IMG/VR virus record: IMGVR_UViG_3300049460_000312
Location: 186,001-250,000 of that record
DNA length: 64,000 nucleotides
Reading direction: 5' to 3' (one strand)
The first letter of the stretch is position 1. Every line of letters begins with the position of its first letter. Made by a program: the position numbers and the translations under genes. A model generated the notes under the pieces. That model saw only the letters and a program-made list of their open reading frames with translations. It was not told the DNA's origin and made no database searches. Shown piece after piece: positions 278 to 45,582 of this stretch.

Positions 278-1963
278 ATGTCTACTCCGAGCCCTCTCTA
301 TCGCTATCCCCTGGATGGCACCGGCACCAGTCCGGATAACCTGGTCGTCGGCGAAGAACATCAGCTGTCCAATCGTACGGTGCGCGCGATCGCTCCGACG
401 TACGGCGGCTTCTTCGCAGAGTCCTGTGTGGTCAAGGACCTGGCGACCAGTCAGCCCCTCATCAAGGGCACTGACTACTACTTCGGTGAGCTGTTCGAGT
501 TCCCCACGGGACGCTACGGTAAGGAAATCTTCGGGGTCATCCTGATCACGAAGCCGAACGTCGCAGGCGTGTCGATCAACTACCAGGCGCTGGGTGGGGA
601 TTACTCGTACTCGATGGACGCAATCATCGCCATGATCGATAGCCTGAATCTGGGCGACCGTCCGGTGGCGTGGGGCGACATCATTGGTCGTCCGACCTTG
701 TTCGATCCGGCCACGCACTGGCACGATGCCGGTGATGTGTACGGTTTCGAGTACGTGGTCTCGGCCCTGATCCAGCTGCGCAACGCCATCCTCACGGGTG
801 ACGTCGCCTCACACGACGAGATCTACCGCTACATCGATACCTGGGCGAATCAGAACCAGCAAGCGATCGATGCGGTCTCGGCGGCTCTGGCTGCGCACGT
901 CGCACGTACGGATAACCCGCACGGCACCACCAAGGCCCAAGTGGGGTTGGGCAATGTCGACAACTACCTGACGGCGACGCAGGCGCAGATGAATACCGGT
1001 ACGGCCACGAACCTGTTCGTGACCCCGGCGATTGTCGCGGCCTACGTGACCGCTCAGGCCGTGAATCCGCTGGCCGCACACGCTGCCCGCACGGATAATC
1101 CCCATGCCGTGACCAAGGCGCAAACGGGTCTCGGGAATGTGGACAACTTCTTGACTGCCACCCTAGCCCAGGCTCAGGCGGGCGTCGTCACGAATGCGTT
1201 CATGACGCCGTACCTCGTGGCGCAGGCAATCACCACGCAAGCGGGTGCCGCACTCGCCCTGCACGTTCAGGACCACAATAACCCTCACCAGGTGACGGTG
1301 GCGCAACTGAATACGTTTGACGGACCGACTATCACCGCCAAAATCAAGGTGACTGATGATAAGGTGGTGTACCATACTACCAACAACAACAACACTACCC
1401 GCAATCCACACGGCACCCAGGCAGGAGATGTAGGCGCAGTTTCCCAAGCGGACTTCAACAACTCGTACTGGCCCACGCTACAGAACCAGCTGGCCGGCAA
1501 ACAGCCAAACGGCAACTATGCCGTGATTGGTTCCAGTCCGTCCTTTAACGTGGTTTACGCCAACCAGTTCTGGTCGTACGGTGACATCGTTGCATTCAAC
1601 TCGGATCGACGTCTGAAAAAGAATGTACGTCCGATTCAGGGTGCGTTGGCGAAGTTGCGCAAGATCCGTGGGGTGTTGTATCGCTACAAGGTTTCTGCAA
1701 TCGAGATCCTTCAGCTTGAAGATCGCGAGTACATGGGTGTGATCGCACAGGAAATCCAGGCCGTGTGTCCGGAGATCGTGTGTCTCGCCCCGTTTGACCG
1801 CGACCCTGACACGGGCCTGTCCATCAGCGGCAAGAACTTCTTGACTGTGCAGTACGAGAAGCTCACCGCCTTGCTGATTGAAGCCCAGAAGGAAGCGGAT
1901 GCGATCCAGCAAGAAATCTGTCGCCGTCTTGGCTACACGGACTTGCTGCCTCTTGCTGCATAA
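278..1963 (+). CDS. Tail fibre protein with C-terminal intramolecular chaperone (Peptidase_S74)
   Basis: Repeated H-x-x-RTDNPH-x-VTKAQ-x-GLGNVDN units typical of phage fibres. The C-terminus has SDRRLKKNVRPIQGALAKLRKIRGVLY, the S74 autocleavage motif. Start MSTPSP at 278 is preferred over 239. Confidence 0.85.
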   Translation: MSTPSPLYRYPLDGTGTSPDNLVVGEEHQLSNRTVRAIAPTYGGFFAESCVVKDLATSQPLIKGTDYYFGELFEFPTGRYGKEIFGVILITKPNVAGVSINYQALGGDYSYSMDAIIAMIDSLNLGDRPVAWGDIIGRPTLFDPATHWHDAGDVYGFEYVVSALIQLRNAILTGDVASHDEIYRYIDTWANQNQQAIDAVSAALAAHVARTDNPHGTTKAQVGLGNVDNYLTATQAQMNTGTATNLFVTPAIVAAYVTAQAVNPLAAHAARTDNPHAVTKAQTGLGNVDNFLTATLAQAQAGVVTNAFMTPYLVAQAITTQAGAALALHVQDHNNPHQVTVAQLNTFDGPTITAKIKVTDDKVVYHTTNNNNTTRNPHGTQAGDVGAVSQADFNNSYWPTLQNQLAGKQPNGNYAVIGSSPSFNVVYANQFWSYGDIVAFNSDRRLKKNVRPIQGALAKLRKIRGVLYRYKVSAIEILQLEDREYMGVIAQEIQAVCPEIVCLAPFDRDPDTGLSISGKNFLTVQYEKLTALLIEAQKEADAIQQEICRRLGYTDLLPLAA

Positions 1964-2887: not shown

Positions 2888-3511
2888 TTATGCCGCCGTG
2901 AGCTTATTGGTGAAGACAGTCGAGTAGAGCTCGGCCAGTTTCGCCTTCTCTTCCGGGTTGTACAGGTCATTGCCCGCGAAGATCTCATCAGCCAACGTGA
3001 CGGGCAGCGGCGGCCACTCCGTCATCTCAGCCGGCGTCTCCAGATCGATCTTGACCCAGTCTTTCGGGTTACCCTGCGCATCGATAAAGACGTCGACTTC
3101 CCACTTCAGTTCCGTGCCTTCGATTGGGAAGGTGTAACGGATTTTGTCCATCGACTCACCGGTGATCGCCTTGAAGACTTCGTGCAGGTCTTTCGACACC
3201 GGCACCGAGACTTCATCCGCTTCACCGCGACCCGAGTAGGCTTTGGCGGTGAGCGTAAAGCGCACCTGACCCATCCCCGTGGTTTCCCGCACGCGAATGG
3301 TGCCGCCATTACCCTTAAGCGAGCTCTGCTTCTGGGTTTCCTGGCTGGCGGCTTTCTGCAATTGACTGACGTCGGTCAAACGGCCGTACCAGACGTATTC
3401 CTTCTCTTTGGCCTTCTGGCCGTTTTCCAGGTCTTCCAGACCCAGCTTGTATTTCATCATACCCGGGGCCACCAGAGTCAGGCCCTGGAAAATATCGTGC
3501 AATGCTTTCAT
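2888..3511 (-). CDS. CYTH-like (triphosphate tunnel metalloenzyme) protein
   Basis: EKEY N-terminal motif (ExExK-like), IRVR, LTAK, E..V, KIRY..F, WEVDVF and IDLE motifs match the CYTH pattern. Confidence 0.75.
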   Translation of the reverse strand: MKALHDIFQGLTLVAPGMMKYKLGLEDLENGQKAKEKEYVWYGRLTDVSQLQKAASQETQKQSSLKGNGGTIRVRETTGMGQVRFTLTAKAYSGRGEADEVSVPVSKDLHEVFKAITGESMDKIRYTFPIEGTELKWEVDVFIDAQGNPKDWVKIDLETPAEMTEWPPLPVTLADEIFAGNDLYNPEEKAKLAELYSTVFTNKLTAA

Positions 3512-12004: not shown

Positions 12005-14092
12005 TTACGCTGCTTTGACTTCCTTGGACAAGAGGAAGCAATCACGATTCAGCAGGCCGCGGTGCAGGCGGTAGCGAACGTTGTCCTTGGTGACGAGGAA
12101 TTGCTCCGAGAAGTGCTTGGTGTTGATAGCTTCGGTGAAAGTGCTGCGCGCGATTTCGTACAACGCGCCCAGCGAATCACCCTGAATGGTAGCCGGTCCT
12201 TTCGGCGGCATGCCGATCGCGAGTTCGTCGTCCGTGAAGTTGACCCACACCGCACACACGAAACGTTGCAGGAACAGCACGCGCGCCAGAACCGATTCCG
12301 GCAGTTCCTCGACATCTCCCGTCGCGAGGGTTGCATTGGCGTAAGCCGTCATTTCGGTCGCAGCGACCACCTTGATGTTCGACTTCAACAGCAATGTCTG
12401 ATTCGCACGCATCTTCTCGCCGACCAGGGCGCCTTGCGTACGCTCCAGCACGTCGATGATCTGCGGGCCGTCTTCAGCGAAGTCCGAGATGCGCACCCCG
12501 ACGCCGAGCTCGCACTCGGTCGCACGGTTGATGGCTTGCACCAGAACGTCATTGATGGTCTTGCGGGCCAGATCGCTTCGGATCTTGCTGATGTAGCTGG
12601 CGGCTTCTGCGAAATCCTTGCTGCCGGCAATCGCGTTGATGACGATCATGTCGTCGTTGGCGTCTTCTGCCGAACCGTACACCACCGGCGAATTGACCAC
12701 CGACATGTTGACGAACGCATCCGGCACCTTCTCGCTCATTTCGGCAGTCAGGCGCGTGGTGCGAATCGCACCCGAGACGTCTTCTTCCGTGCTGTAGTGA
12801 TCCGCGACCGTGATGTTGATCTTCACGTTCTTCGAGTCCGTGTAAAGCACTGCGGCTTCCTTACGAACCGGTTTCTGGATGGCTTCCGGATCGGGCTGGC
12901 CCTTCGTCGGATCGATGGCGTGAGCATCGTAATTCATTGCATTTTCCTTTTGTTCTTCAGTCAACGGCTGCAGCATGGCGACAATCAGACCGTCCCTCGT
13001 TTCGAAATACAGCACCTTGTGAGTGCGTGCGCACCAGGCCGGGTGGAAGCGTTGCAAACGGCTCGGTTTCCATTTCTGGACTCCGTCCTTCACTTGACGC
13101 ATCACATCCACGGCTTCATTTTCAATCTGCACCGAGAACATCGGCTTGGCCGGCTTGACTTCTGCCGGCGCGGACACCGGCTGCACCGGTGCGCTGAAGT
13201 TCGTCACGTTGGCGTCGAACTGGCGTGCAGCTTCCGCTGCGTTCTGATCCACCGGTGCTTGCGTGACCATATGCTTACGGATACGCGAGCGATAACCCGT
13301 ATCGGTCGGCGTCGGGTCCGGACGATCGAGCGAAACCTGAGCACCCGAGAGACCCGTGTCATGCAAGGCGCCCTGCAGCGAGCCTTCCAGCTTGCCCAGC
13401 AGCTTTTCTGCACGCCGACCATAGCGACCACCCGCACGCGACGCGTTGTTGTTGTACGCGGTCGTGGTGACGCCACCTTCGAACTGCTGCGGGGCTTCCA
13501 CGTAACCACCCGTGATACCGCGGGCTGCCTGCATCGCCTGCTGGGTCGTACCGCTCACGCCCGTCAGACCACCGCCCGAACCACCCATCTGGGCGAAGGG
13601 CACATACTGCGCCTGACCTTGTGCGAGCGCCAACAGGTAATTCCAGATCTCGGCGTTTTCCCGCACGTCTGCTGCATCACGCGGATTGAGCGAAGCCATG
13701 AATTCTGGATCTTCAGCCGCCATCGCCGAACCACAGCACTTCACCCCACGGGCGATACATTCCTTGGCAGCCATATCCAGGCTACGGAATTCACCACCCT
13801 GCATGCCGTAACCGACACGCGTGATGATCGTCTGCACCAGATCCTGGAACAGCGCGTTGTTGAAGGCGTTTTCCGAAACGATGTTGAACATCCCCACCCG
13901 GATCGGATGGCCTTGTGCGGCACGCGCCTGAATTTCCTGAATTGTCATCAGGCAGATCTGCGGCGTGAGCTGATCGTACGGGTTACCGAGGCCGAAGTTC
14001 CAGTTGGCGAACTGGGGTGCGAGCTGCTGCAGATCGTACATTTCGATCGCGACACCGCCTGCGGGACGGTTGAACATGTTAGTCGTATGCAT
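12005..14092 (-). CDS. Conserved jumbo-phage hypothetical protein downstream of nvRNAP beta
   Basis: 695 aa with normal codon bias and an RBS; core-block position; ends in EVKAA. Confidence 0.75.
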   Translation of the reverse strand: MHTTNMFNRPAGGVAIEMYDLQQLAPQFANWNFGLGNPYDQLTPQICLMTIQEIQARAAQGHPIRVGMFNIVSENAFNNALFQDLVQTIITRVGYGMQGGEFRSLDMAAKECIARGVKCCGSAMAAEDPEFMASLNPRDAADVRENAEIWNYLLALAQGQAQYVPFAQMGGSGGGLTGVSGTTQQAMQAARGITGGYVEAPQQFEGGVTTTAYNNNASRAGGRYGRRAEKLLGKLEGSLQGALHDTGLSGAQVSLDRPDPTPTDTGYRSRIRKHMVTQAPVDQNAAEAARQFDANVTNFSAPVQPVSAPAEVKPAKPMFSVQIENEAVDVMRQVKDGVQKWKPSRLQRFHPAWCARTHKVLYFETRDGLIVAMLQPLTEEQKENAMNYDAHAIDPTKGQPDPEAIQKPVRKEAAVLYTDSKNVKINITVADHYSTEEDVSGAIRTTRLTAEMSEKVPDAFVNMSVVNSPVVYGSAEDANDDMIVINAIAGSKDFAEAASYISKIRSDLARKTINDVLVQAINRATECELGVGVRISDFAEDGPQIIDVLERTQGALVGEKMRANQTLLLKSNIKVVAATEMTAYANATLATGDVEELPESVLARVLFLQRFVCAVWVNFTDDELAIGMPPKGPATIQGDSLGALYEIARSTFTEAINTKHFSEQFLVTKDNVRYRLHRGLLNRDCFLLSKEVKAA

Positions 14093-21847: not shown

Positions 21848-21848
21848 A

Positions 21849-21912
21849 GCAAAAAAAAAAGATAGCGGGCATAAGCGAGAGAGACCCGAAGGTCTCTCTC
21901 GCTTTTATGCCG
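21849..21912. terminator. Bidirectional terminator with TTATGCCG overlapping an Ala-Ala-stop
   Basis: A-run, GCGAGAGAGAC/GTCTCTCTCGC stem, TTTTATGCCG. Confidence 0.8.
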
Positions 21913-22249
21913 CATGAAGCGAGCCGGAGGTAATGAATGCGAGCCGATTCCTGGCCAGATCGTAGGTCACCCCGCAGTACACCAATTCCTGAACGATCTC
22001 GTGTGTGGCGACCAGCTTGAAGACTTCGATCGGAAGACGGAAGTAGATCGTCGAATTGAAGACGGCGTCCACCATCGGCAGCGAGTCGGTCATCGTGACA
22101 AAAGCCAGCTTGTCCAGTACCAGCAGCGCGTGAACGTCGGGTCGACGGGCGCGCTTGTTCTTGACGTGGTCATACAGGCAGTAGCCTGACAGCGAACTGA
22201 ACAAATCGTACAGTTCCTGATTTGTCATGTGTTTGATTTCTTTGTTCAC
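21905..22249 (-). CDS. Hypothetical protein
   Basis: ORF with RBS; ends in SLHAA. Confidence 0.65.
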   Translation of the reverse strand: MNKEIKHMTNQELYDLFSSLSGYCLYDHVKNKRARRPDVHALLVLDKLAFVTMTDSLPMVDAVFNSTIYFRLPIEVFKLVATHEIVQELVYCGVTYDLARNRLAFITSGSLHAA

Positions 22250-22315
22250 GTTTCACTCCCTATTGGAGGCGTAAGTCAGGCACGCCGTACTTCGACCTCA
22301 CGGTCGCTCTCGCTC

Positions 22316-22630
22316 TTATGCCGGTTTTTGCACTGTCTTCATAAAAGCAAGTGCATCGTCAAGTGCCGTGCCCACATCATCTCGCGGGTACGAACAGAAC
22401 ATCTGAGTCTGAACCGTGCCGAAGATCAATCCTTCCGGTTGGTTGACGCTCACAAACCAGATGTAATCCAGATTACCCGTCTCTTTCCAGAGACGGTATT
22501 CCAGATTGCATTCCCAGGTGATCTTTTCCAACTCGTTCAATTTCTCTACGTGACAGGCCCAATTCACCGCAGGAGGGCGCTCGAACTTCGCATTCGGATC
22601 ATACACGGGGCGCTTGGATCGTCTGGTCAT
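22316..22630 (-). CDS. Hypothetical protein
   Basis: RBS GGAGG before the ATG. Confidence 0.65.
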   Translation of the reverse strand: MTRRSKRPVYDPNAKFERPPAVNWACHVEKLNELEKITWECNLEYRLWKETGNLDYIWFVSVNQPEGLIFGTVQTQMFCSYPRDDVGTALDDALAFMKTVQKPA

Positions 22631-22638
22631 ATTACCTC

Positions 22639-23013
22639 CTAGTTAAGACGCATGTCGGGGACACCATAACGCTTGGTAGCGTAGTAGGTGTAGTCCTTGA
22701 ACCGCTGGATATGGCTCAACAGACACTGGTTCACCGGATAACCCAGCTCCCCTTTCGGGCAGTCATGATTGGCCGACGAAGCGATGGCTTGGCGTTTGGC
22801 TTCTACCTGGGACTTCACCACCATCGGCACCTGGCGTGAGTTGTACACGGCCTGCGCGTACTCGTCAGCCTGATCGTATTCGCTGACGATGACATTCGAC
22901 CAGCAATTGTCCTTCTGCTGCTTAGTCGGCAGCGTATCACACGTGGAAACGGCAAACGCCTGAGAGGCCCACAGAGCGATTACGAGAGCCAGGATATAGT
23001 TACGCATAGCCAT
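22639..23013 (-). CDS. Secreted/periplasmic protein, LprI (DUF1311) lysozyme-inhibitor-like
   Basis: Sec signal (ALWASQAFA) and four Cys in the C-x11-C ... C-x11-C helical pattern typical of LprI. Confidence 0.55.
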   Translation of the reverse strand: MAMRNYILALVIALWASQAFAVSTCDTLPTKQQKDNCWSNVIVSEYDQADEYAQAVYNSRQVPMVVKSQVEAKRQAIASSANHDCPKGELGYPVNQCLLSHIQRFKDYTYYATKRYGVPDMRLN

Positions 23014-23075
23014 CCCTCCTTAACGGCATAGAGAGCGGATTAGACCGCTCCCTGTGCATGTTTAACTGCGTCTTG

Positions 23076-23477
23076 TTACCTGACCACTGACAGGAAGCTC
23101 TTTTTCGGTGCCGTTTCCTCAACTGCTTTCGCTGGAGCGGGTTCAACGGGACTTTCCGGCTTCGGCTCGAACTGGAATGCCATGCCTTCCTGGGTTTCTC
23201 GCGCAAAGAGCGCCACCACGTTATCGACCGGCACTTCAATCTGGAAGAGCTTGCCGGAGAAGCGCGCATTGAACTCGATCAGTTCATTGCCCATCCGCAA
23301 CTGGGTGGTCGCCTGTACGCTAATGTCTAGCGTGATCGAGTCGTCCTTCACATGCTGCATCGGCACGCGGGTGCGGCTATCGACCTGCACCGTGAGATAC
23401 GGCGTGTAGTTGTTGTCGGTGCACCACTCATAGAGGGCGCGCAGGAAGTACGGCTTCTGGGAAGTAGATTGACTCAT
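23076..23477 (-). CDS. sspB: ClpXP adaptor SspB (stringent starvation protein B)
   Basis: QKPYFLRALYEWCTDNNYTPYL, ARFSGK and V.ALFARET..GMAF; C-terminal XB-like motif FLSVVR. Confidence 0.93.
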   Translation of the reverse strand: MSQSTSQKPYFLRALYEWCTDNNYTPYLTVQVDSRTRVPMQHVKDDSITLDISVQATTQLRMGNELIEFNARFSGKLFQIEVPVDNVVALFARETQEGMAFQFEPKPESPVEPAPAKAVEETAPKKSFLSVVR

Positions 23478-23638
23478 TATCGGTTCTTCTTCAACTGAGC
23501 ATTAAGTTCATCTCCGACACGCTGGACTTTCTGTTCGTCCAGCGTGTCGCAGCCTTGCAGGGAGCGTAGGGCCGCGCCGAGGACTACCCCCGTTGCCGGG
23601 GTAGAGCTCGACCTTCGTCGGCAGGTTTGGCTTGCTCG

Positions 23639-35590: not shown

Positions 35591-36529
35591 TCATGCAGCC
35601 AACAACTCCGTCGGCGGCGTTTCGGCTTTGCTCTTGCCGTTACGCTCGTCTTCGTGATCGAGCAACTCCTGGTAGAGGTCGATCATTTCGCGAGTTTCTT
35701 CGGGCAGGTTCGGATACTGCTTCGGATGCTCGCGCAGGTAGTCCGTCGCCAGACGCAGTACGCGGCCGGTGAACTGCCTGAGCAGGCTGACGGCGTTCTC
35801 GTTGATGCCCTGCGGCATGTCGAACGGGCTACGTTCGGTACGCGCACGAATCACGCCCGTGACTTCCCGAAGAAAGCCTTCGGACATCGAGGTGGCCCAA
35901 TTGGCACGATTCATTTCGATCAGTTCCTGAATCGTACGGCAATGCTGCTTGTCGCCATCCAGGTAGGCGAGCATGCGGTGCGCCGACCAGAGCGTACCGA
36001 GGTAAGTGCGTTCCTGCTTGTACTCACGGCCATGATCGTCAATGGCTTGTAGCGTGCGCATACCGTTGGTGATATGTTCACCGCAGCGATGCACCAGGTT
36101 CGGCAACAGGAAATAATCCTGCGCGATGTCCTCGAACAGGAACCGTACCTGAGCGTTGTCCGCGGCGAAGCGTTCGTACGCCATCAGCGAGAAGGTGCTC
36201 GCATTCATGATGCCGCGCAAGAGACTACGCATATCCAGCAGCGATACCATGATCTGCCAGCCGAGCTCCCGCGACATCTGCGTGGAGAGCTTGGCGAGCT
36301 TGTCGCGCCGGTCATCCAGCGTGCCTTCGAAAATCGGCGCGTTGGACATGTTCAGGTAGTCCGAGACGGGTCGGTTCAGCAGGAAGCAGATGTCCGTGTC
36401 GGAGTTCGGGTCATTGAAGCCGCGCAGGATCGATCCGTGGATCGTCGCTGCCGTTACTTCCAGTCCCAGGTGACGAGAGACTAGGGCGGTGGCTTCAGCA
36501 AGTCGTTGCTTTTTGAGTTGTTCGTTCAT
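35591..36529 (-). CDS. Pol-beta superfamily nucleotidyltransferase (RlaP/Nuc-transf-like), copy 1
   Basis: IHGSILRGFNDPNSDTDICFLL signature and LDMR third-acid region; ends in ELLAA. Confidence 0.8.
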   Translation of the reverse strand: MNEQLKKQRLAEATALVSRHLGLEVTAATIHGSILRGFNDPNSDTDICFLLNRPVSDYLNMSNAPIFEGTLDDRRDKLAKLSTQMSRELGWQIMVSLLDMRSLLRGIMNASTFSLMAYERFAADNAQVRFLFEDIAQDYFLLPNLVHRCGEHITNGMRTLQAIDDHGREYKQERTYLGTLWSAHRMLAYLDGDKQHCRTIQELIEMNRANWATSMSEGFLREVTGVIRARTERSPFDMPQGINENAVSLLRQFTGRVLRLATDYLREHPKQYPNLPEETREMIDLYQELLDHEDERNGKSKAETPPTELLAA

Positions 36530-37513: not shown

Positions 37514-37686
37514 CGTTCTTCCTCATGTGGGTGCATGCGATAAAATAACCCTCCGAGTAAGAATTAGCAGCGCGCCCGCATTCTGTAGCCGCCACAACCC
37601 AATCCCGGTGGCTAGTTACATTCCATTTAACCTGGGTCGCTGTTCAGCTCGTTGGTTGAGGAAGTGCCGGTAACGCCCGCAGTACC

Positions 37687-37756
37687 TGCTCTGGTAGTAG
37701 ATTGGAATAACGCCGGTTACGACCCGGAAAAGTGGGTTCGATTCCCATCCAGGCAG
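37687..37756 (+). tRNA. tRNA-Arg(ACG)-like element, degenerate, no encoded CCA
   Basis: T-arm GTGGG-TTCGATT-CCCAT; anticodon arm CCGG-TTACGAC-CCGG; acceptor TGC(T)CTGG/CCAGGCA with a bulge; weak D-stem. Confidence 0.5.
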
Positions 37757-37765
37757 TGTCACAGC

Positions 37766-41189: not shown

Positions 41190-41789
41190 TTAAGCCGCCA
41201 TGGCTTCGTAGCTGTAGTCCAACGTGAGACTGAGTACCGATTTGCCAGCCACCATAAAGGCGACGTGCATGCCGGTCTGTGTGGGCGTGAAGCGCACGTG
41301 ATGCGGCGTGGTCGCGTCTTTCGGCTTGACTGACGTTCGCAGGGCTTTAAAACCTTCCACAGCGTAATGGGAAAAGCGCGGATTGGCCATCAGCACTTCA
41401 TGCGCCTTAGCCCACTCCACACTCTTACCGAGCAGTGACAAGTCATGCTTGCGTGGCACCACAGGCTCACGTACCACGTCGGTATAGACCGCCAGACTCT
41501 CACCACGTTCAGCCACCAGCACATTCACCACCTGAGAGACCGTCTCGTTTGAGCACAACGCAATGCGCAGTACTGGCACGCTCGTATGTTCGCGACTCTC
41601 CCAGGTCTGGATATGGAAGCCGCGTGTCTTGGCCTGTTTCCACAAACGATCCAGCGCATCCCACAGCGCACGCATGACCAGACCGTTATCGAACTCGTGA
41701 TCGAATCCCGCATCCCGGAATGTGTACATCAATTCCATTACATCCTTGAACTGCTTGCCGTTAAAGGCTTTGAGCTTACTCGTGGTCAT
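41190..41789 (-). CDS. Hypothetical protein
   Basis: 199 aa; ends in EAMAA. Confidence 0.65.
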   Translation of the reverse strand: MTTSKLKAFNGKQFKDVMELMYTFRDAGFDHEFDNGLVMRALWDALDRLWKQAKTRGFHIQTWESREHTSVPVLRIALCSNETVSQVVNVLVAERGESLAVYTDVVREPVVPRKHDLSLLGKSVEWAKAHEVLMANPRFSHYAVEGFKALRTSVKPKDATTPHHVRFTPTQTGMHVAFMVAGKSVLSLTLDYSYEAMAA

Positions 41790-42904: not shown

Positions 42905-43516
42905 TTAAGCCGCCTTTTCTACCGCGTCCAGTAGACGGGTATTCCAGGGCGGCACAAAACCTTCACAGGCCGCCTTACGGGAGGTACGGCTAATGGCCCC
43001 ACAGAGGATCTGGGTGCGCTGGTCCTGCGGGTATTTGAAGTGGGTCGGATGGCGTTCGTCATCCAGCGTCTCCGAGAAACCCCGGAAGCTGGCGTTGTAT
43101 TCGAAACCAATCGACTCGATGAACTTCATGCTCCAGTGACAGAGGACGATTTCCCGCACACTTGTAGTGTAGAGTTTACGGGCGAGGATGTCTCCGTCTT
43201 TCACAATCAGCCACGGCTGAATCGAGCGCAGCAACATCGCGAAGAGGTCGAGACTGCCAAAGTGGCAGGCTGCCCGACTTTCATAGACCCAGTGATTGCC
43301 CTTGTTCTCTTTCACCCGCCAGCCCCAGGTCTCGAACGACTCAGCGCCCGAGGTCAGCATCGTGCGCAGTGTCGAGCTGTTGTGCAGACCCAGTAACGAG
43401 TCTTTGAACTCCGGCGGATTCGTGATGCCATACAACTGATCCAGCATGGCGATGGTCCGCGCCGGAGCTGACTTGCGGATTTTCAAGCGGGTAGCGACAC
43501 CTTCATAAGCACTCAT
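42905..43516 (-). CDS. Hypothetical protein, paralogue of 41820-42473
   Basis: See the paralogue; ends in VEKAA. Confidence 0.7.
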   Translation of the reverse strand: MSAYEGVATRLKIRKSAPARTIAMLDQLYGITNPPEFKDSLLGLHNSSTLRTMLTSGAESFETWGWRVKENKGNHWVYESRAACHFGSLDLFAMLLRSIQPWLIVKDGDILARKLYTTSVREIVLCHWSMKFIESIGFEYNASFRGFSETLDDERHPTHFKYPQDQRTQILCGAISRTSRKAACEGFVPPWNTRLLDAVEKAA

Positions 43517-45413: not shown

Positions 45414-45489
45414 TGGCTCCCCGGGTTGGACTTGAACCAACGACCAACGGATTAACAGTCCGCTACTCTACCGACTGAGCTACCAGGGA
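45414..45489 (-). tRNA. tRNA-Asn(GTT) with encoded CCA
   Basis: TCCCTGG/CCGGGGA acceptor, D-arm GCTC-AGTCGGTA-GAGT, anticodon loop CT-GTT-AA, T-loop TTCAAGT. Confidence 0.95.
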
Positions 45490-45505: not shown

Positions 45506-45582
45506 TGGCGCGGCGTAGGGGACTTGAACCCCTGACCCCTGGCGTGACAGGCCAGTACTCTAACCAACTGAGCTAACACCGC
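45506..45582 (-). tRNA. tRNA-Asp(GTC) with encoded CCA
   Basis: GCGGTGT/ACGCCGC acceptor, anticodon loop CT-GTC-AC, T-loop TTCAAGT. Confidence 0.95.

What the first reader, a model, noticed from the sequence alone, without database searches (positions are those of the whole stretch)
23076..23477. Phage-encoded SspB plus many -AA C-termini: a possible phage-directed ClpXP proteolysis programme
Seen: an intact SspB with a retained ClpX-docking-like tail (FLSVVR). Seven proteins in the window end in Ala-Ala: tail fibre (PLAA), CYTH (LTAA), 12005-14092 (VKAA), 21905-22249 (LHAA), NTase 35591-36529 (LLAA), 41190-41789 (AMAA) and 42905-43516 (EKAA). That is 7 of roughly 85 genes; if Ala is about 10% of residues, about one would be expected. 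Only two overlap the GCGGCATAA motif, and the others use different Ala codons and stops. Known: ClpX recognises C-terminal AA/LAA, and SspB delivers ssrA-tagged and some other substrates to ClpXP. Caveat: SspB binds the AANDENY part of the tag, which these proteins lack. Inference: the phage tags its own transient proteins for ClpXP and uses SspB to retune protease specificity, e.g. to clear ribosome-rescue products, destroy host defence proteins or regulators, or compete with host SspB.
Basis: partly seen in the sequence, partly recalled or inferred. Interest (0 to 1): 0.75.

Follow-up and report, generated by a model that had tools for sequence, protein, structure and literature searches.

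The report
Phage-borne SspB; Ala-Ala ends are background
A giant Ralstonia phage carries an intact, host-derived copy of the ClpXP adaptor SspB, which is a known kind of phage accessory gene, but the many proteins ending in Ala-Ala are no more frequent than in the host's own proteome or in a sister phage that lacks SspB, so there is no evidence for a phage proteolysis-tagging programme.

Summary
The SspB gene is real. Window 23076-23477 (-) encodes a 133-aa SspB with a folded substrate-binding domain, a roughly 23-residue disordered linker, and a C-terminal FLSVVR that fits the beta-proteobacterial ClpX-docking motif (host SLKVVK). It came from a Burkholderiaceae host, sits in a variable accessory island beside DnaB in a phiKZ-like Ralstonia jumbo phage, and is under purifying selection (dN/dS about 0.2).

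C-termini are Ala-rich in general:
- A Ralstonia-like genome has 5.3% AA ends and Paraburkholderia 3.3%, against 4.1% in the phage.
- The closest relative without sspB, RP12, has 4.8%; the sspB-carrying FLC phages have 2.5-2.8%.
- AA ends are no better conserved between orthologues than other ends.
- Two of the seven are by-products of a terminator-associated DNA motif, GCGGCATAA.
- Only 3 of 12 have the Leu at -3 that strong ClpX degrons favour.
- The set includes a tail fibre and virion proteins.

The linked programme is therefore not supported.

Phage-encoded SspB has been reported before (pf16 gp18, Erwinia phage RAY gp039, PHROG 8945), so this is a new member of a known kind. Its role is untested. 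Most likely it modulates host ClpXP handling of ssrA-tagged products.

The parts
23076..23477 (-). sspB coding sequence (133 aa plus TAA stop)
   Evidence: ORF. Pfam PF04386 E 2e-29; NCBIfam NF008769 above its cut-off; PHROG 8945; PDB SspB E 4e-24.
23166..23477 (-). Substrate-binding domain, residues 1-104 (helix 8-21 plus beta-sandwich)
   Evidence: AF2 pLDDT about 97 for residues 10-100. Foldseek TMt 0.88-0.92 to 1OU9, 1OU8 and 1OX9. 40 of the 47 columns that are at least 90% conserved in 115 cellular SspBs are retained. dN/dS about 0.2.
23097..23165 (-). Disordered Pro/Ala/Glu/Lys-rich linker, residues 105-127. It is about 23 residues, against about 55-60 in Ralstonia SspB (165 aa).
   Evidence: pLDDT below 50 at residues 115-127. 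Alignment with P0056.
23079..23096 (-). C-terminal FLSVVR, a ClpX N-domain docking (XB) type motif
   Evidence: Aligns with host SLKVVK or HLKVVK. Nearly all of the ~115 cellular homologues end L-[KTRQ]-[VR]-[VI]-K. Phage-clade copies end FL[SKQ]VV[KR].
21905..21913 (-). GCGGCATAA element at the terminator of the convergent DnaB gene. It supplies the Ala-Ala-stop of ORF 21905-22249.
2888..2896 (-). GCGGCATAA element that supplies the Ala-Ala-stop of ORF 2888-3511. The FLC orthologues end LTEA.
278..1963 (+). Tail-fibre or virion protein ending PLAA. Examined and judged background.
   Evidence: The end is conserved in the FLC phages but not in RP12.
12005..14092 (-). 695-aa protein ending VKAA (PHROG 35635, function unknown). 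Judged background.
   Evidence: The FLC orthologues end KPA; the RP12 orthologue ends KAA.
35591..36529 (-). Nucleotidyltransferase-domain protein ending LLAA. Judged background.
   Evidence: The RP12 orthologue ends EITV.
41190..41789 (-). 199-aa protein ending AMAA. Judged background.
42905..43516 (-). 203-aa protein ending EKAA. Judged background.

Best explanation
The feature is a host-derived sspB gene carried as an accessory gene by a phiKZ-like Ralstonia jumbo phage.

Shown:
- It has a complete SspB substrate-binding fold.
- It keeps most residues that are conserved in cellular SspBs. According to the E. coli cryo-EM paper, those conserved residues are the ssrA groove and the dimer interface.
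- It has a disordered linker and a C-terminal L-x-V-V-[KR] docking motif of the host type.
- It is under purifying selection.
- The phage encodes no ClpX, ClpP or tmRNA of its own.

Inferred: during infection the protein dimerises in the cytoplasm, docks on the N-domains of host ClpX, and binds the ANDE-Y part of host ssrA tags (host tag ANDERYALAA). This raises and channels ClpXP degradation of ribosome-rescue products. As a side effect it occupies ClpX N-domains that other adaptors and substrates need.

The Ala-Ala termini of phage proteins are not part of this. They reflect a general Ala bias at C-termini that the host proteome shares, plus a terminator-linked DNA motif in two cases.
For: Identity and anatomy.
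XB motif.
Conserved-column retention, 40/47. Conserved SspB surfaces are the groove and dimer interface: bioRxiv 10.1101/2022.11.06.515074, read.
dN/dS about 0.2.
One clade nested in Ralstonia plus Burkholderia SspBs.
Same synteny beside DnaB in FLC4-3B and FLC1-1B and in a metagenomic contig.
No phage tmRNA, ClpP or ClpX zinc domain.
The host-genus genome has ClpX and the tag ANDERYALAA.
AA termini are background.
Against: No binding or degradation was tested. The complex prediction with the host tag gave no answer.

The window's copy changes an Asn that is invariant in 115 cellular SspBs (N51D). The phage clade changes several other conserved positions (T7, L11, V49, G96) and has long branches. 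Tag specificity may therefore have shifted.

The host already has its own SspB (found in 292 of 301 family genomes), so the benefit of a second, ordinary copy is unclear.

The sister phages RP12 and RP31 do without it.
Confidence: 0.5

Rival explanations
1. Decoy or competitor. The phage SspB mainly acts through its XB tail. It saturates the ClpX N-domains and so blocks N-domain-dependent delivery of other substrates or adaptors, including host SspB cargo. This would protect phage proteins or freeze host regulatory proteolysis.
For: The XB motif is retained in independent phage lineages: pf16 KKPTLRVVK and NCTB KKPTLSVVK. The XB peptide alone inhibits ClpXP degradation of lambda O and FtsZ (PMC3983244). 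There are substitutions at otherwise conserved SBD positions, including N51D. The linker is shorter than in the Ralstonia and Burkholderia proteins.
Against: Most conserved SBD columns are kept (40/47), and dN/dS in the SBD is about 0.2. A pure tail decoy would not need that. Many cellular beta-proteobacterial SspBs are equally short at 135-140 aa.
Confidence: 0.2
2. Retargeted adaptor. The groove has drifted to bind a specific host or phage protein, such as a defence protein, an anti-sigma fragment like RseA, or an early phage protein, and delivers it to ClpXP.
For: The phage clade evolves fast (SspB lies at the 17th percentile of orthologue identity, with long branches). It carries clade-specific changes at conserved positions. 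SspB is known to deliver RseA by a different binding mode (PDB 1YFN title; pf16 paper PMC5587285).
Against: No candidate cargo was identified. The neighbouring genes have no recognisable domains. The groove and dimer residues are largely host-like.
Confidence: 0.15
3. The phage marks its own transient proteins with C-terminal Ala-Ala for ClpXP and uses its SspB to tune that programme.
For: AA ends exceed a composition-only null: 12 against about 3 expected. Three proteins end in LAA, and those ends are conserved in the FLC phages. Terminal Ala-Ala is the core of ClpX C-terminal degrons (PMC10862746).
Against: The same AA-end rate occurs in host-family genomes (3.3-5.3%), where it involves housekeeping enzymes. 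The rate is highest in sspB-less RP12. There is no extra conservation. Two ends are made by a DNA motif. Virion and tail proteins are among them. 9 of the 12 lack Leu at -3, and several have disfavoured residues there (T, H, K, Q). SspB does not read the AA end.
Confidence: 0.04

Closest known systems
Cellular SspB of Burkholderiaceae (e.g. the Ralstonia solanacearum complex ClpXP protease specificity-enhancing factor, 165 aa, P0056)
   Same: The SBD is 54-68% identical. The conserved core is the same (K8 P9 Y10 R13 E17 W18 C19 D21, A71 R72 F73 G75, E94 G98 M99). The architecture is the same: SBD, disordered linker, then a C-terminal L-x-V-V-K type tail.
   Different: It is carried by a phage. 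The linker is about 23 residues, against about 55-60. The tail has Phe before the Leu and ends in Arg. There are substitutions at columns that are otherwise at least 90% conserved (T7Q, L11F, G23N, V49T, N51D, I90L, G96Q). It evolves much faster.
Phage-encoded SspB-like proteins: PHROG 8945, Pseudomonas phage pf16 gp18 (PMC5587285), Erwinia phage RAY gp039 (bioRxiv 10.1101/2023.02.24.529968), phage NCTB
   Same: All are host-type SspB genes in large phages. pf16 and NCTB also combine a short linker with an intact XB-type tail. RAY is, like this phage, a phiKZ-like jumbo phage, and its SspB homologue is cytoplasmic.
   Different: They were acquired independently: identity to pf16 and NCTB is only 29-37%, whereas this clade is nested in Burkholderiaceae SspBs. 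None has been tested biochemically.
E. coli / H. influenzae SspB (PDB 1OX9, 1OU8, 8ET3)
   Same: Same fold (TM about 0.9, 41-43% identity).
   Different: The host tag is ANDERYALAA rather than AANDENYALAA. Tag binding by the phage protein was not shown (one search gave no answer).

Membership tests
SspB (Pfam PF04386; ClpXP protease specificity-enhancing factor) | SspB substrate-binding domain, by sequence and fold | tested here: met
   PF04386 E 2e-29. NF008769 at 149.5 bits, above the 135-bit cut-off. AF2 model compared with 1OU8 and 1OX9 gives TMt 0.9 and rmsd 1.1-1.4.
SspB (Pfam PF04386; ClpXP protease specificity-enhancing factor) | C-terminal ClpX N-domain binding (XB) motif after a flexible linker | tested here: met
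   By sequence only. FLSVVR aligns with the host L-K-V-V-K, and the linker has pLDDT below 50. Physical binding to ClpX was not tested.
SspB (Pfam PF04386; ClpXP protease specificity-enhancing factor) | [quoted passage not shown] | tested here: inconclusive
   40 of 47 highly conserved columns are kept, but the invariant Asn51 is Asp. The predicted complex with ANDERYALAA gave no answer, because a control scored higher.
SspB (Pfam PF04386; ClpXP protease specificity-enhancing factor) | Homodimer that enhances ClpXP degradation of tagged substrates | not testable with these tools
   This needs biochemistry.
ClpX C-motif-1 (ssrA-like, -LAA) degron set as a phage programme | AA termini enriched beyond what proteomes of this lineage show | tested here: not met
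   Phage 4.1%, Ralstonia-like genome 5.3%, Paraburkholderia 3.3%. Fisher P 1.0 against the pooled hosts.
ClpX C-motif-1 (ssrA-like, -LAA) degron set as a phage programme | Co-occurrence with phage sspB among relatives | tested here: not met
   RP12 has no SspB and 13/270 AA ends. The sspB+ phages have 12/292, 7/285 and 8/290.
ClpX C-motif-1 (ssrA-like, -LAA) degron set as a phage programme | AA ends conserved by selection among orthologues | tested here: not met
   7/11 against 128/238 (P 0.56), and 4/10 against 57/189 (P 0.50).
ClpX C-motif-1 (ssrA-like, -LAA) degron set as a phage programme | ssrA-like upstream residues (hydrophobic, Leu at -3) and an exposed tail | tested here: not met
   Only 3 of 12 end in LAA. 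The others have T, K, H, M, Q, A or V at -3, and PMC10862746 shows that Ala-Ala alone is insufficient. Exposure of the tails was not tested.

The most novel reading that the evidence does not exclude
The phage clade of SspBs has a short linker, a Phe-Leu-x-Val-Val tail, and altered conserved positions, including N51D in this copy. It could be a specialised tool for taking over host ClpXP. It might act as an N-domain decoy that shields phage proteins, or as an adaptor retargeted to a host defence or regulatory protein. In either case it would work in the cytoplasm of a nucleus-forming jumbo phage infection.
Probability: 0.3. Interest if true: 0.55.

Novelty: new member of a known kind. Interest (0 to 1): 0.25.

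Why it matters
Phage manipulation of host AAA+ proteolysis is poorly studied. At least three independent phage lineages have picked up SspB and kept the ClpX-docking tail, which suggests that ClpXP is a recurrent target of host takeover. No phage SspB has been tested, so this one is a reasonable candidate for a simple biochemical study.

The negative result also matters. C-terminal Ala-Ala counts must be judged against real C-terminal composition, which is about 3-5% AA in Burkholderiaceae, and not against overall Ala content.

Tried and rejected
- Predicted complex of the SspB(1-112) dimer with the host tag ANDERYALAA: no answer, because a control peptide scored higher. It is not used as evidence.
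I re-ran it with rows from the protein search only.
- Search of IMG/VR viral contigs for relatives of this SspB: none confirmed.
- Published lists of SspB groove residues (Song & Eck 2003, Levchenko 2003, Chien 2007): not held in the library. N51D and the other substitutions therefore could not be assigned to the groove or to the dimer interface.
- Sigma-70 promoter and terminator scan around sspB: nothing above chance.
- A DNA-level cause for all AA ends: rejected. The codons and stops differ, and only two ends coincide with GCGGCATAA.
- A phage-encoded tmRNA, ClpP or ClpX as partners: none found.
- Gene calls come from my own codon-model caller. Its stops matched all 13 GenBank CDS in a 12-kb test region of FLC4-3B, and 10 of 10 host AA-enders had Pfam domains. 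Small ORFs may still be miscalled.

Full report
**Context.** The window is bases 186001-250000 of a 283,373-bp virus record with direct terminal repeats, judged complete. The major capsid protein is 92% identical to that of Ralstonia phages FLC1-1B and FLC4-3B and 84% identical to RP12 and RP31. More distantly it matches phiKZ-like jumbo phages such as 201phi2-1 and Goslar. It is therefore a phiKZ-like Ralstonia jumbo phage.

**The SspB gene.**
- ORF 23076-23477 (-) encodes 133 aa.
- It matches Pfam SspB (E 2e-29) and exceeds the curated cut-off of NCBIfam NF008769, 'ClpXP protease specificity-enhancing factor'.
- It matches PHROG 8945, 'SspB-like', and solved H. influenzae and E. coli SspB structures (E 4e-24).
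- An AlphaFold2 model has pLDDT about 97 for residues 10-100 and a disordered residue 105-133.
- Foldseek places the model on SspB structures with TM about 0.9 and rmsd 1.1-1.4 Å.
- The last six residues, FLSVVR, align with the C-terminal ClpX-docking motif of beta-proteobacterial SspBs. Nearly all of the roughly 115 cellular homologues end L-[KTRQ]-[VR]-[VI]-K, and Ralstonia ends SLKVVK.
- The linker is about 23 residues, against about 55-60 in the 165-aa Ralstonia protein. Many other beta-proteobacterial SspBs are as short.

**Origin and evolution of the gene.**
- The nearest cellular proteins are Burkholderiaceae SspBs at 54-68% identity.
- In a tree, the window's protein, the two FLC phage proteins and three metagenomic proteins form one cluster. 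This cluster is nested in the Ralstonia plus Burkholderia group and has long terminal branches.
- At least one metagenomic copy lies next to a DnaB helicase 87% identical to the phage's.
- In the FLC phages the gene has the same position near DnaB.
- RP12, the next relative, has other small genes at that position. It has no SspB by tblastn or by a six-frame Pfam profile search.
- The gene therefore sits in a variable accessory island.
- dN/dS is about 0.2 in the folded domain, including for the closely related FLC pair, so it is a working gene.
- 47 alignment columns are at least 90% conserved in 115 cellular SspBs. The window's copy keeps 40 of them. The exceptions are T7Q, L11F, G23N, V49T, N51D (Asn is invariant in all 115), I90L and G96Q.
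- The E. coli cryo-EM paper states that only the ssrA groove and the dimer interface are strongly conserved in SspB (bioRxiv 10.1101/2022.11.06.515074). Most of those surfaces are therefore retained, with a few changes I could not place.
- The phage has no tmRNA, ClpP or ClpX zinc domain.
- A Ralstonia-like genome has ClpX and a tmRNA with the tag ANDERYALAA.
- A predicted complex of the phage domain with that tag gave no answer.

**The Ala-Ala termini.**
- My gene calls reproduce all seven in the window.
- Genome-wide, 12 of 292 proteins end in AA. Overall composition predicts 2.8-3.4 (P 3e-5 to 2e-4).
- This excess is not special to the phage, however.
- Terminal Ala is enriched about 1.5-fold in the phage and in the bacteria alike.
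- In 0.8 Mb of Paraburkholderia xenovorans, 22 of 658 proteins (3.3%) end in AA.
- In 0.7 Mb of a Ralstonia-like chromosome, 33 of 627 (5.3%) do, six of them in LAA.
- Ten of ten tested host cases are ordinary Pfam-confirmed enzymes, transporters and regulators.
- Against the pooled host rate of 4.3%, the phage genome count is as expected (12.5 expected, P 0.60). The window gives P 0.044.
- Among relatives, the sspB-less RP12 has the most AA ends (13/270), mostly in different genes. FLC4-3B and FLC1-1B have 7/285 and 8/290.
- Orthologous AA ends are kept no more often than other terminal dipeptides: 64% against 54% versus FLC4-3B, and 40% against 30% versus RP12.

**Two AA ends are by-products of a DNA element.**
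- These are the ends of ORFs 2888-3511 and 21905-22249.
- GCGGCATAA occurs 10 times in the window against 0.55 expected, and 27 times in the genome, 25 of them intergenic.
- Each copy is followed by a GC-rich hairpin.
- In 26 of 27 cases the element is oriented so that, on the strand of the gene ending next to the hairpin, it reads stop, hairpin, TTTATGCCGC.
- In these two cases a convergent ORF simply ends inside that element.

**What the AA-ending proteins are.** They include a nicotinamide phosphoribosyltransferase, an SbcC-like protein, a tail fibre, a virion protein, a nucleotidyltransferase and several unknowns. This is not a set of obviously transient proteins. A random-tag screen in E. 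coli found terminal Ala-Ala necessary but not sufficient for ClpXP degradation. In that screen Leu at -3 was favoured, and Pro, His, Gly and small polar residues were disfavoured (PMC10862746). Only 3 of the 12 phage proteins end in LAA.

**Mechanism.**
- What is shown is an intact, selected, host-type SspB with a docking tail, in a phage that depends on host ClpXP.
- The most likely action, which is inferred, is the canonical one. A dimer docks on the ClpX N-domains and hands over ssrA-tagged products, which should be abundant when host mRNA is destroyed.
- Because the XB peptide alone blocks ClpXP degradation of lambda O and FtsZ (PMC3983244), a decoy role is a serious rival.
- The altered conserved positions leave room for a retargeted adaptor.

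**Known relatives and novelty.**
- Phage SspB genes have been reported in Pseudomonas phage pf16, where competition with host SspB at RseA was proposed from modelling (PMC5587285).
- Erwinia jumbo phage RAY also has one, and its product is cytoplasmic.
- pf16 and phage NCTB also keep an XB-type tail (KKPTLRVVK and KKPTLSVVK). The Xanthomonas phage LucasX homologue does not.
- The gene is thus a new member of a known kind.
- The proposed AA-tagging programme is not supported.

Noticed in passing
window 2888, 3551, 11851, 17162, 21905, 31223, 33764, 37803, 46881, 60773 (9-mers); 27 copies in the whole genome: GCGGCATAA is about 18-fold over-represented in the window. It is almost always intergenic and is always followed by one or two A and a GC-rich hairpin. 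On the strand of the adjacent upstream gene it reads stop, hairpin, TTTATGCCGC. This looks like a conserved terminator module, possibly combined with a TATG-type start site for the next gene. FLC4-3B has 23 copies and RP12 has 18.
   Followed up: partly
whole genome; Burkholderiaceae samples G001 and G218: C-terminal Ala-Ala is 2- to 4-fold more frequent than internal Ala-Ala in the phages and in both bacterial genomes sampled (3.3-5.3% of proteins). The excess is concentrated at the very last dipeptide. This is a general C-terminal bias, and its cause was not investigated.
   Followed up: partly
window 22639-23007 (-): A 122-aa protein with an N-terminal signal-peptide-like segment lies directly downstream of sspB. 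A gene of the same size follows sspB in the FLC phages and in a metagenomic contig carrying P0003. It has no Pfam match.
   Followed up: no
window 21848-23638, compared with RP12 109844-111925: The stretch between DnaB helicase and the conserved 143-aa gene is a variable accessory island. It holds a different set of small genes in this phage, the FLC phages, RP12 and contig L173. sspB is one of the cassette genes.
   Followed up: partly
window 37686-37757 (+), 45414-45489 (-), 45506-45582 (-): Three phage tRNA genes: Arg(ACG), Asn(GTT) and Asp(GTC).
   Followed up: no
G000:C1:19868-21685 (-), outside the window: The phage encodes a nicotinamide phosphoribosyltransferase homologue (PHROG 448, E 1e-173), an NAD-salvage gene.
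   Followed up: no
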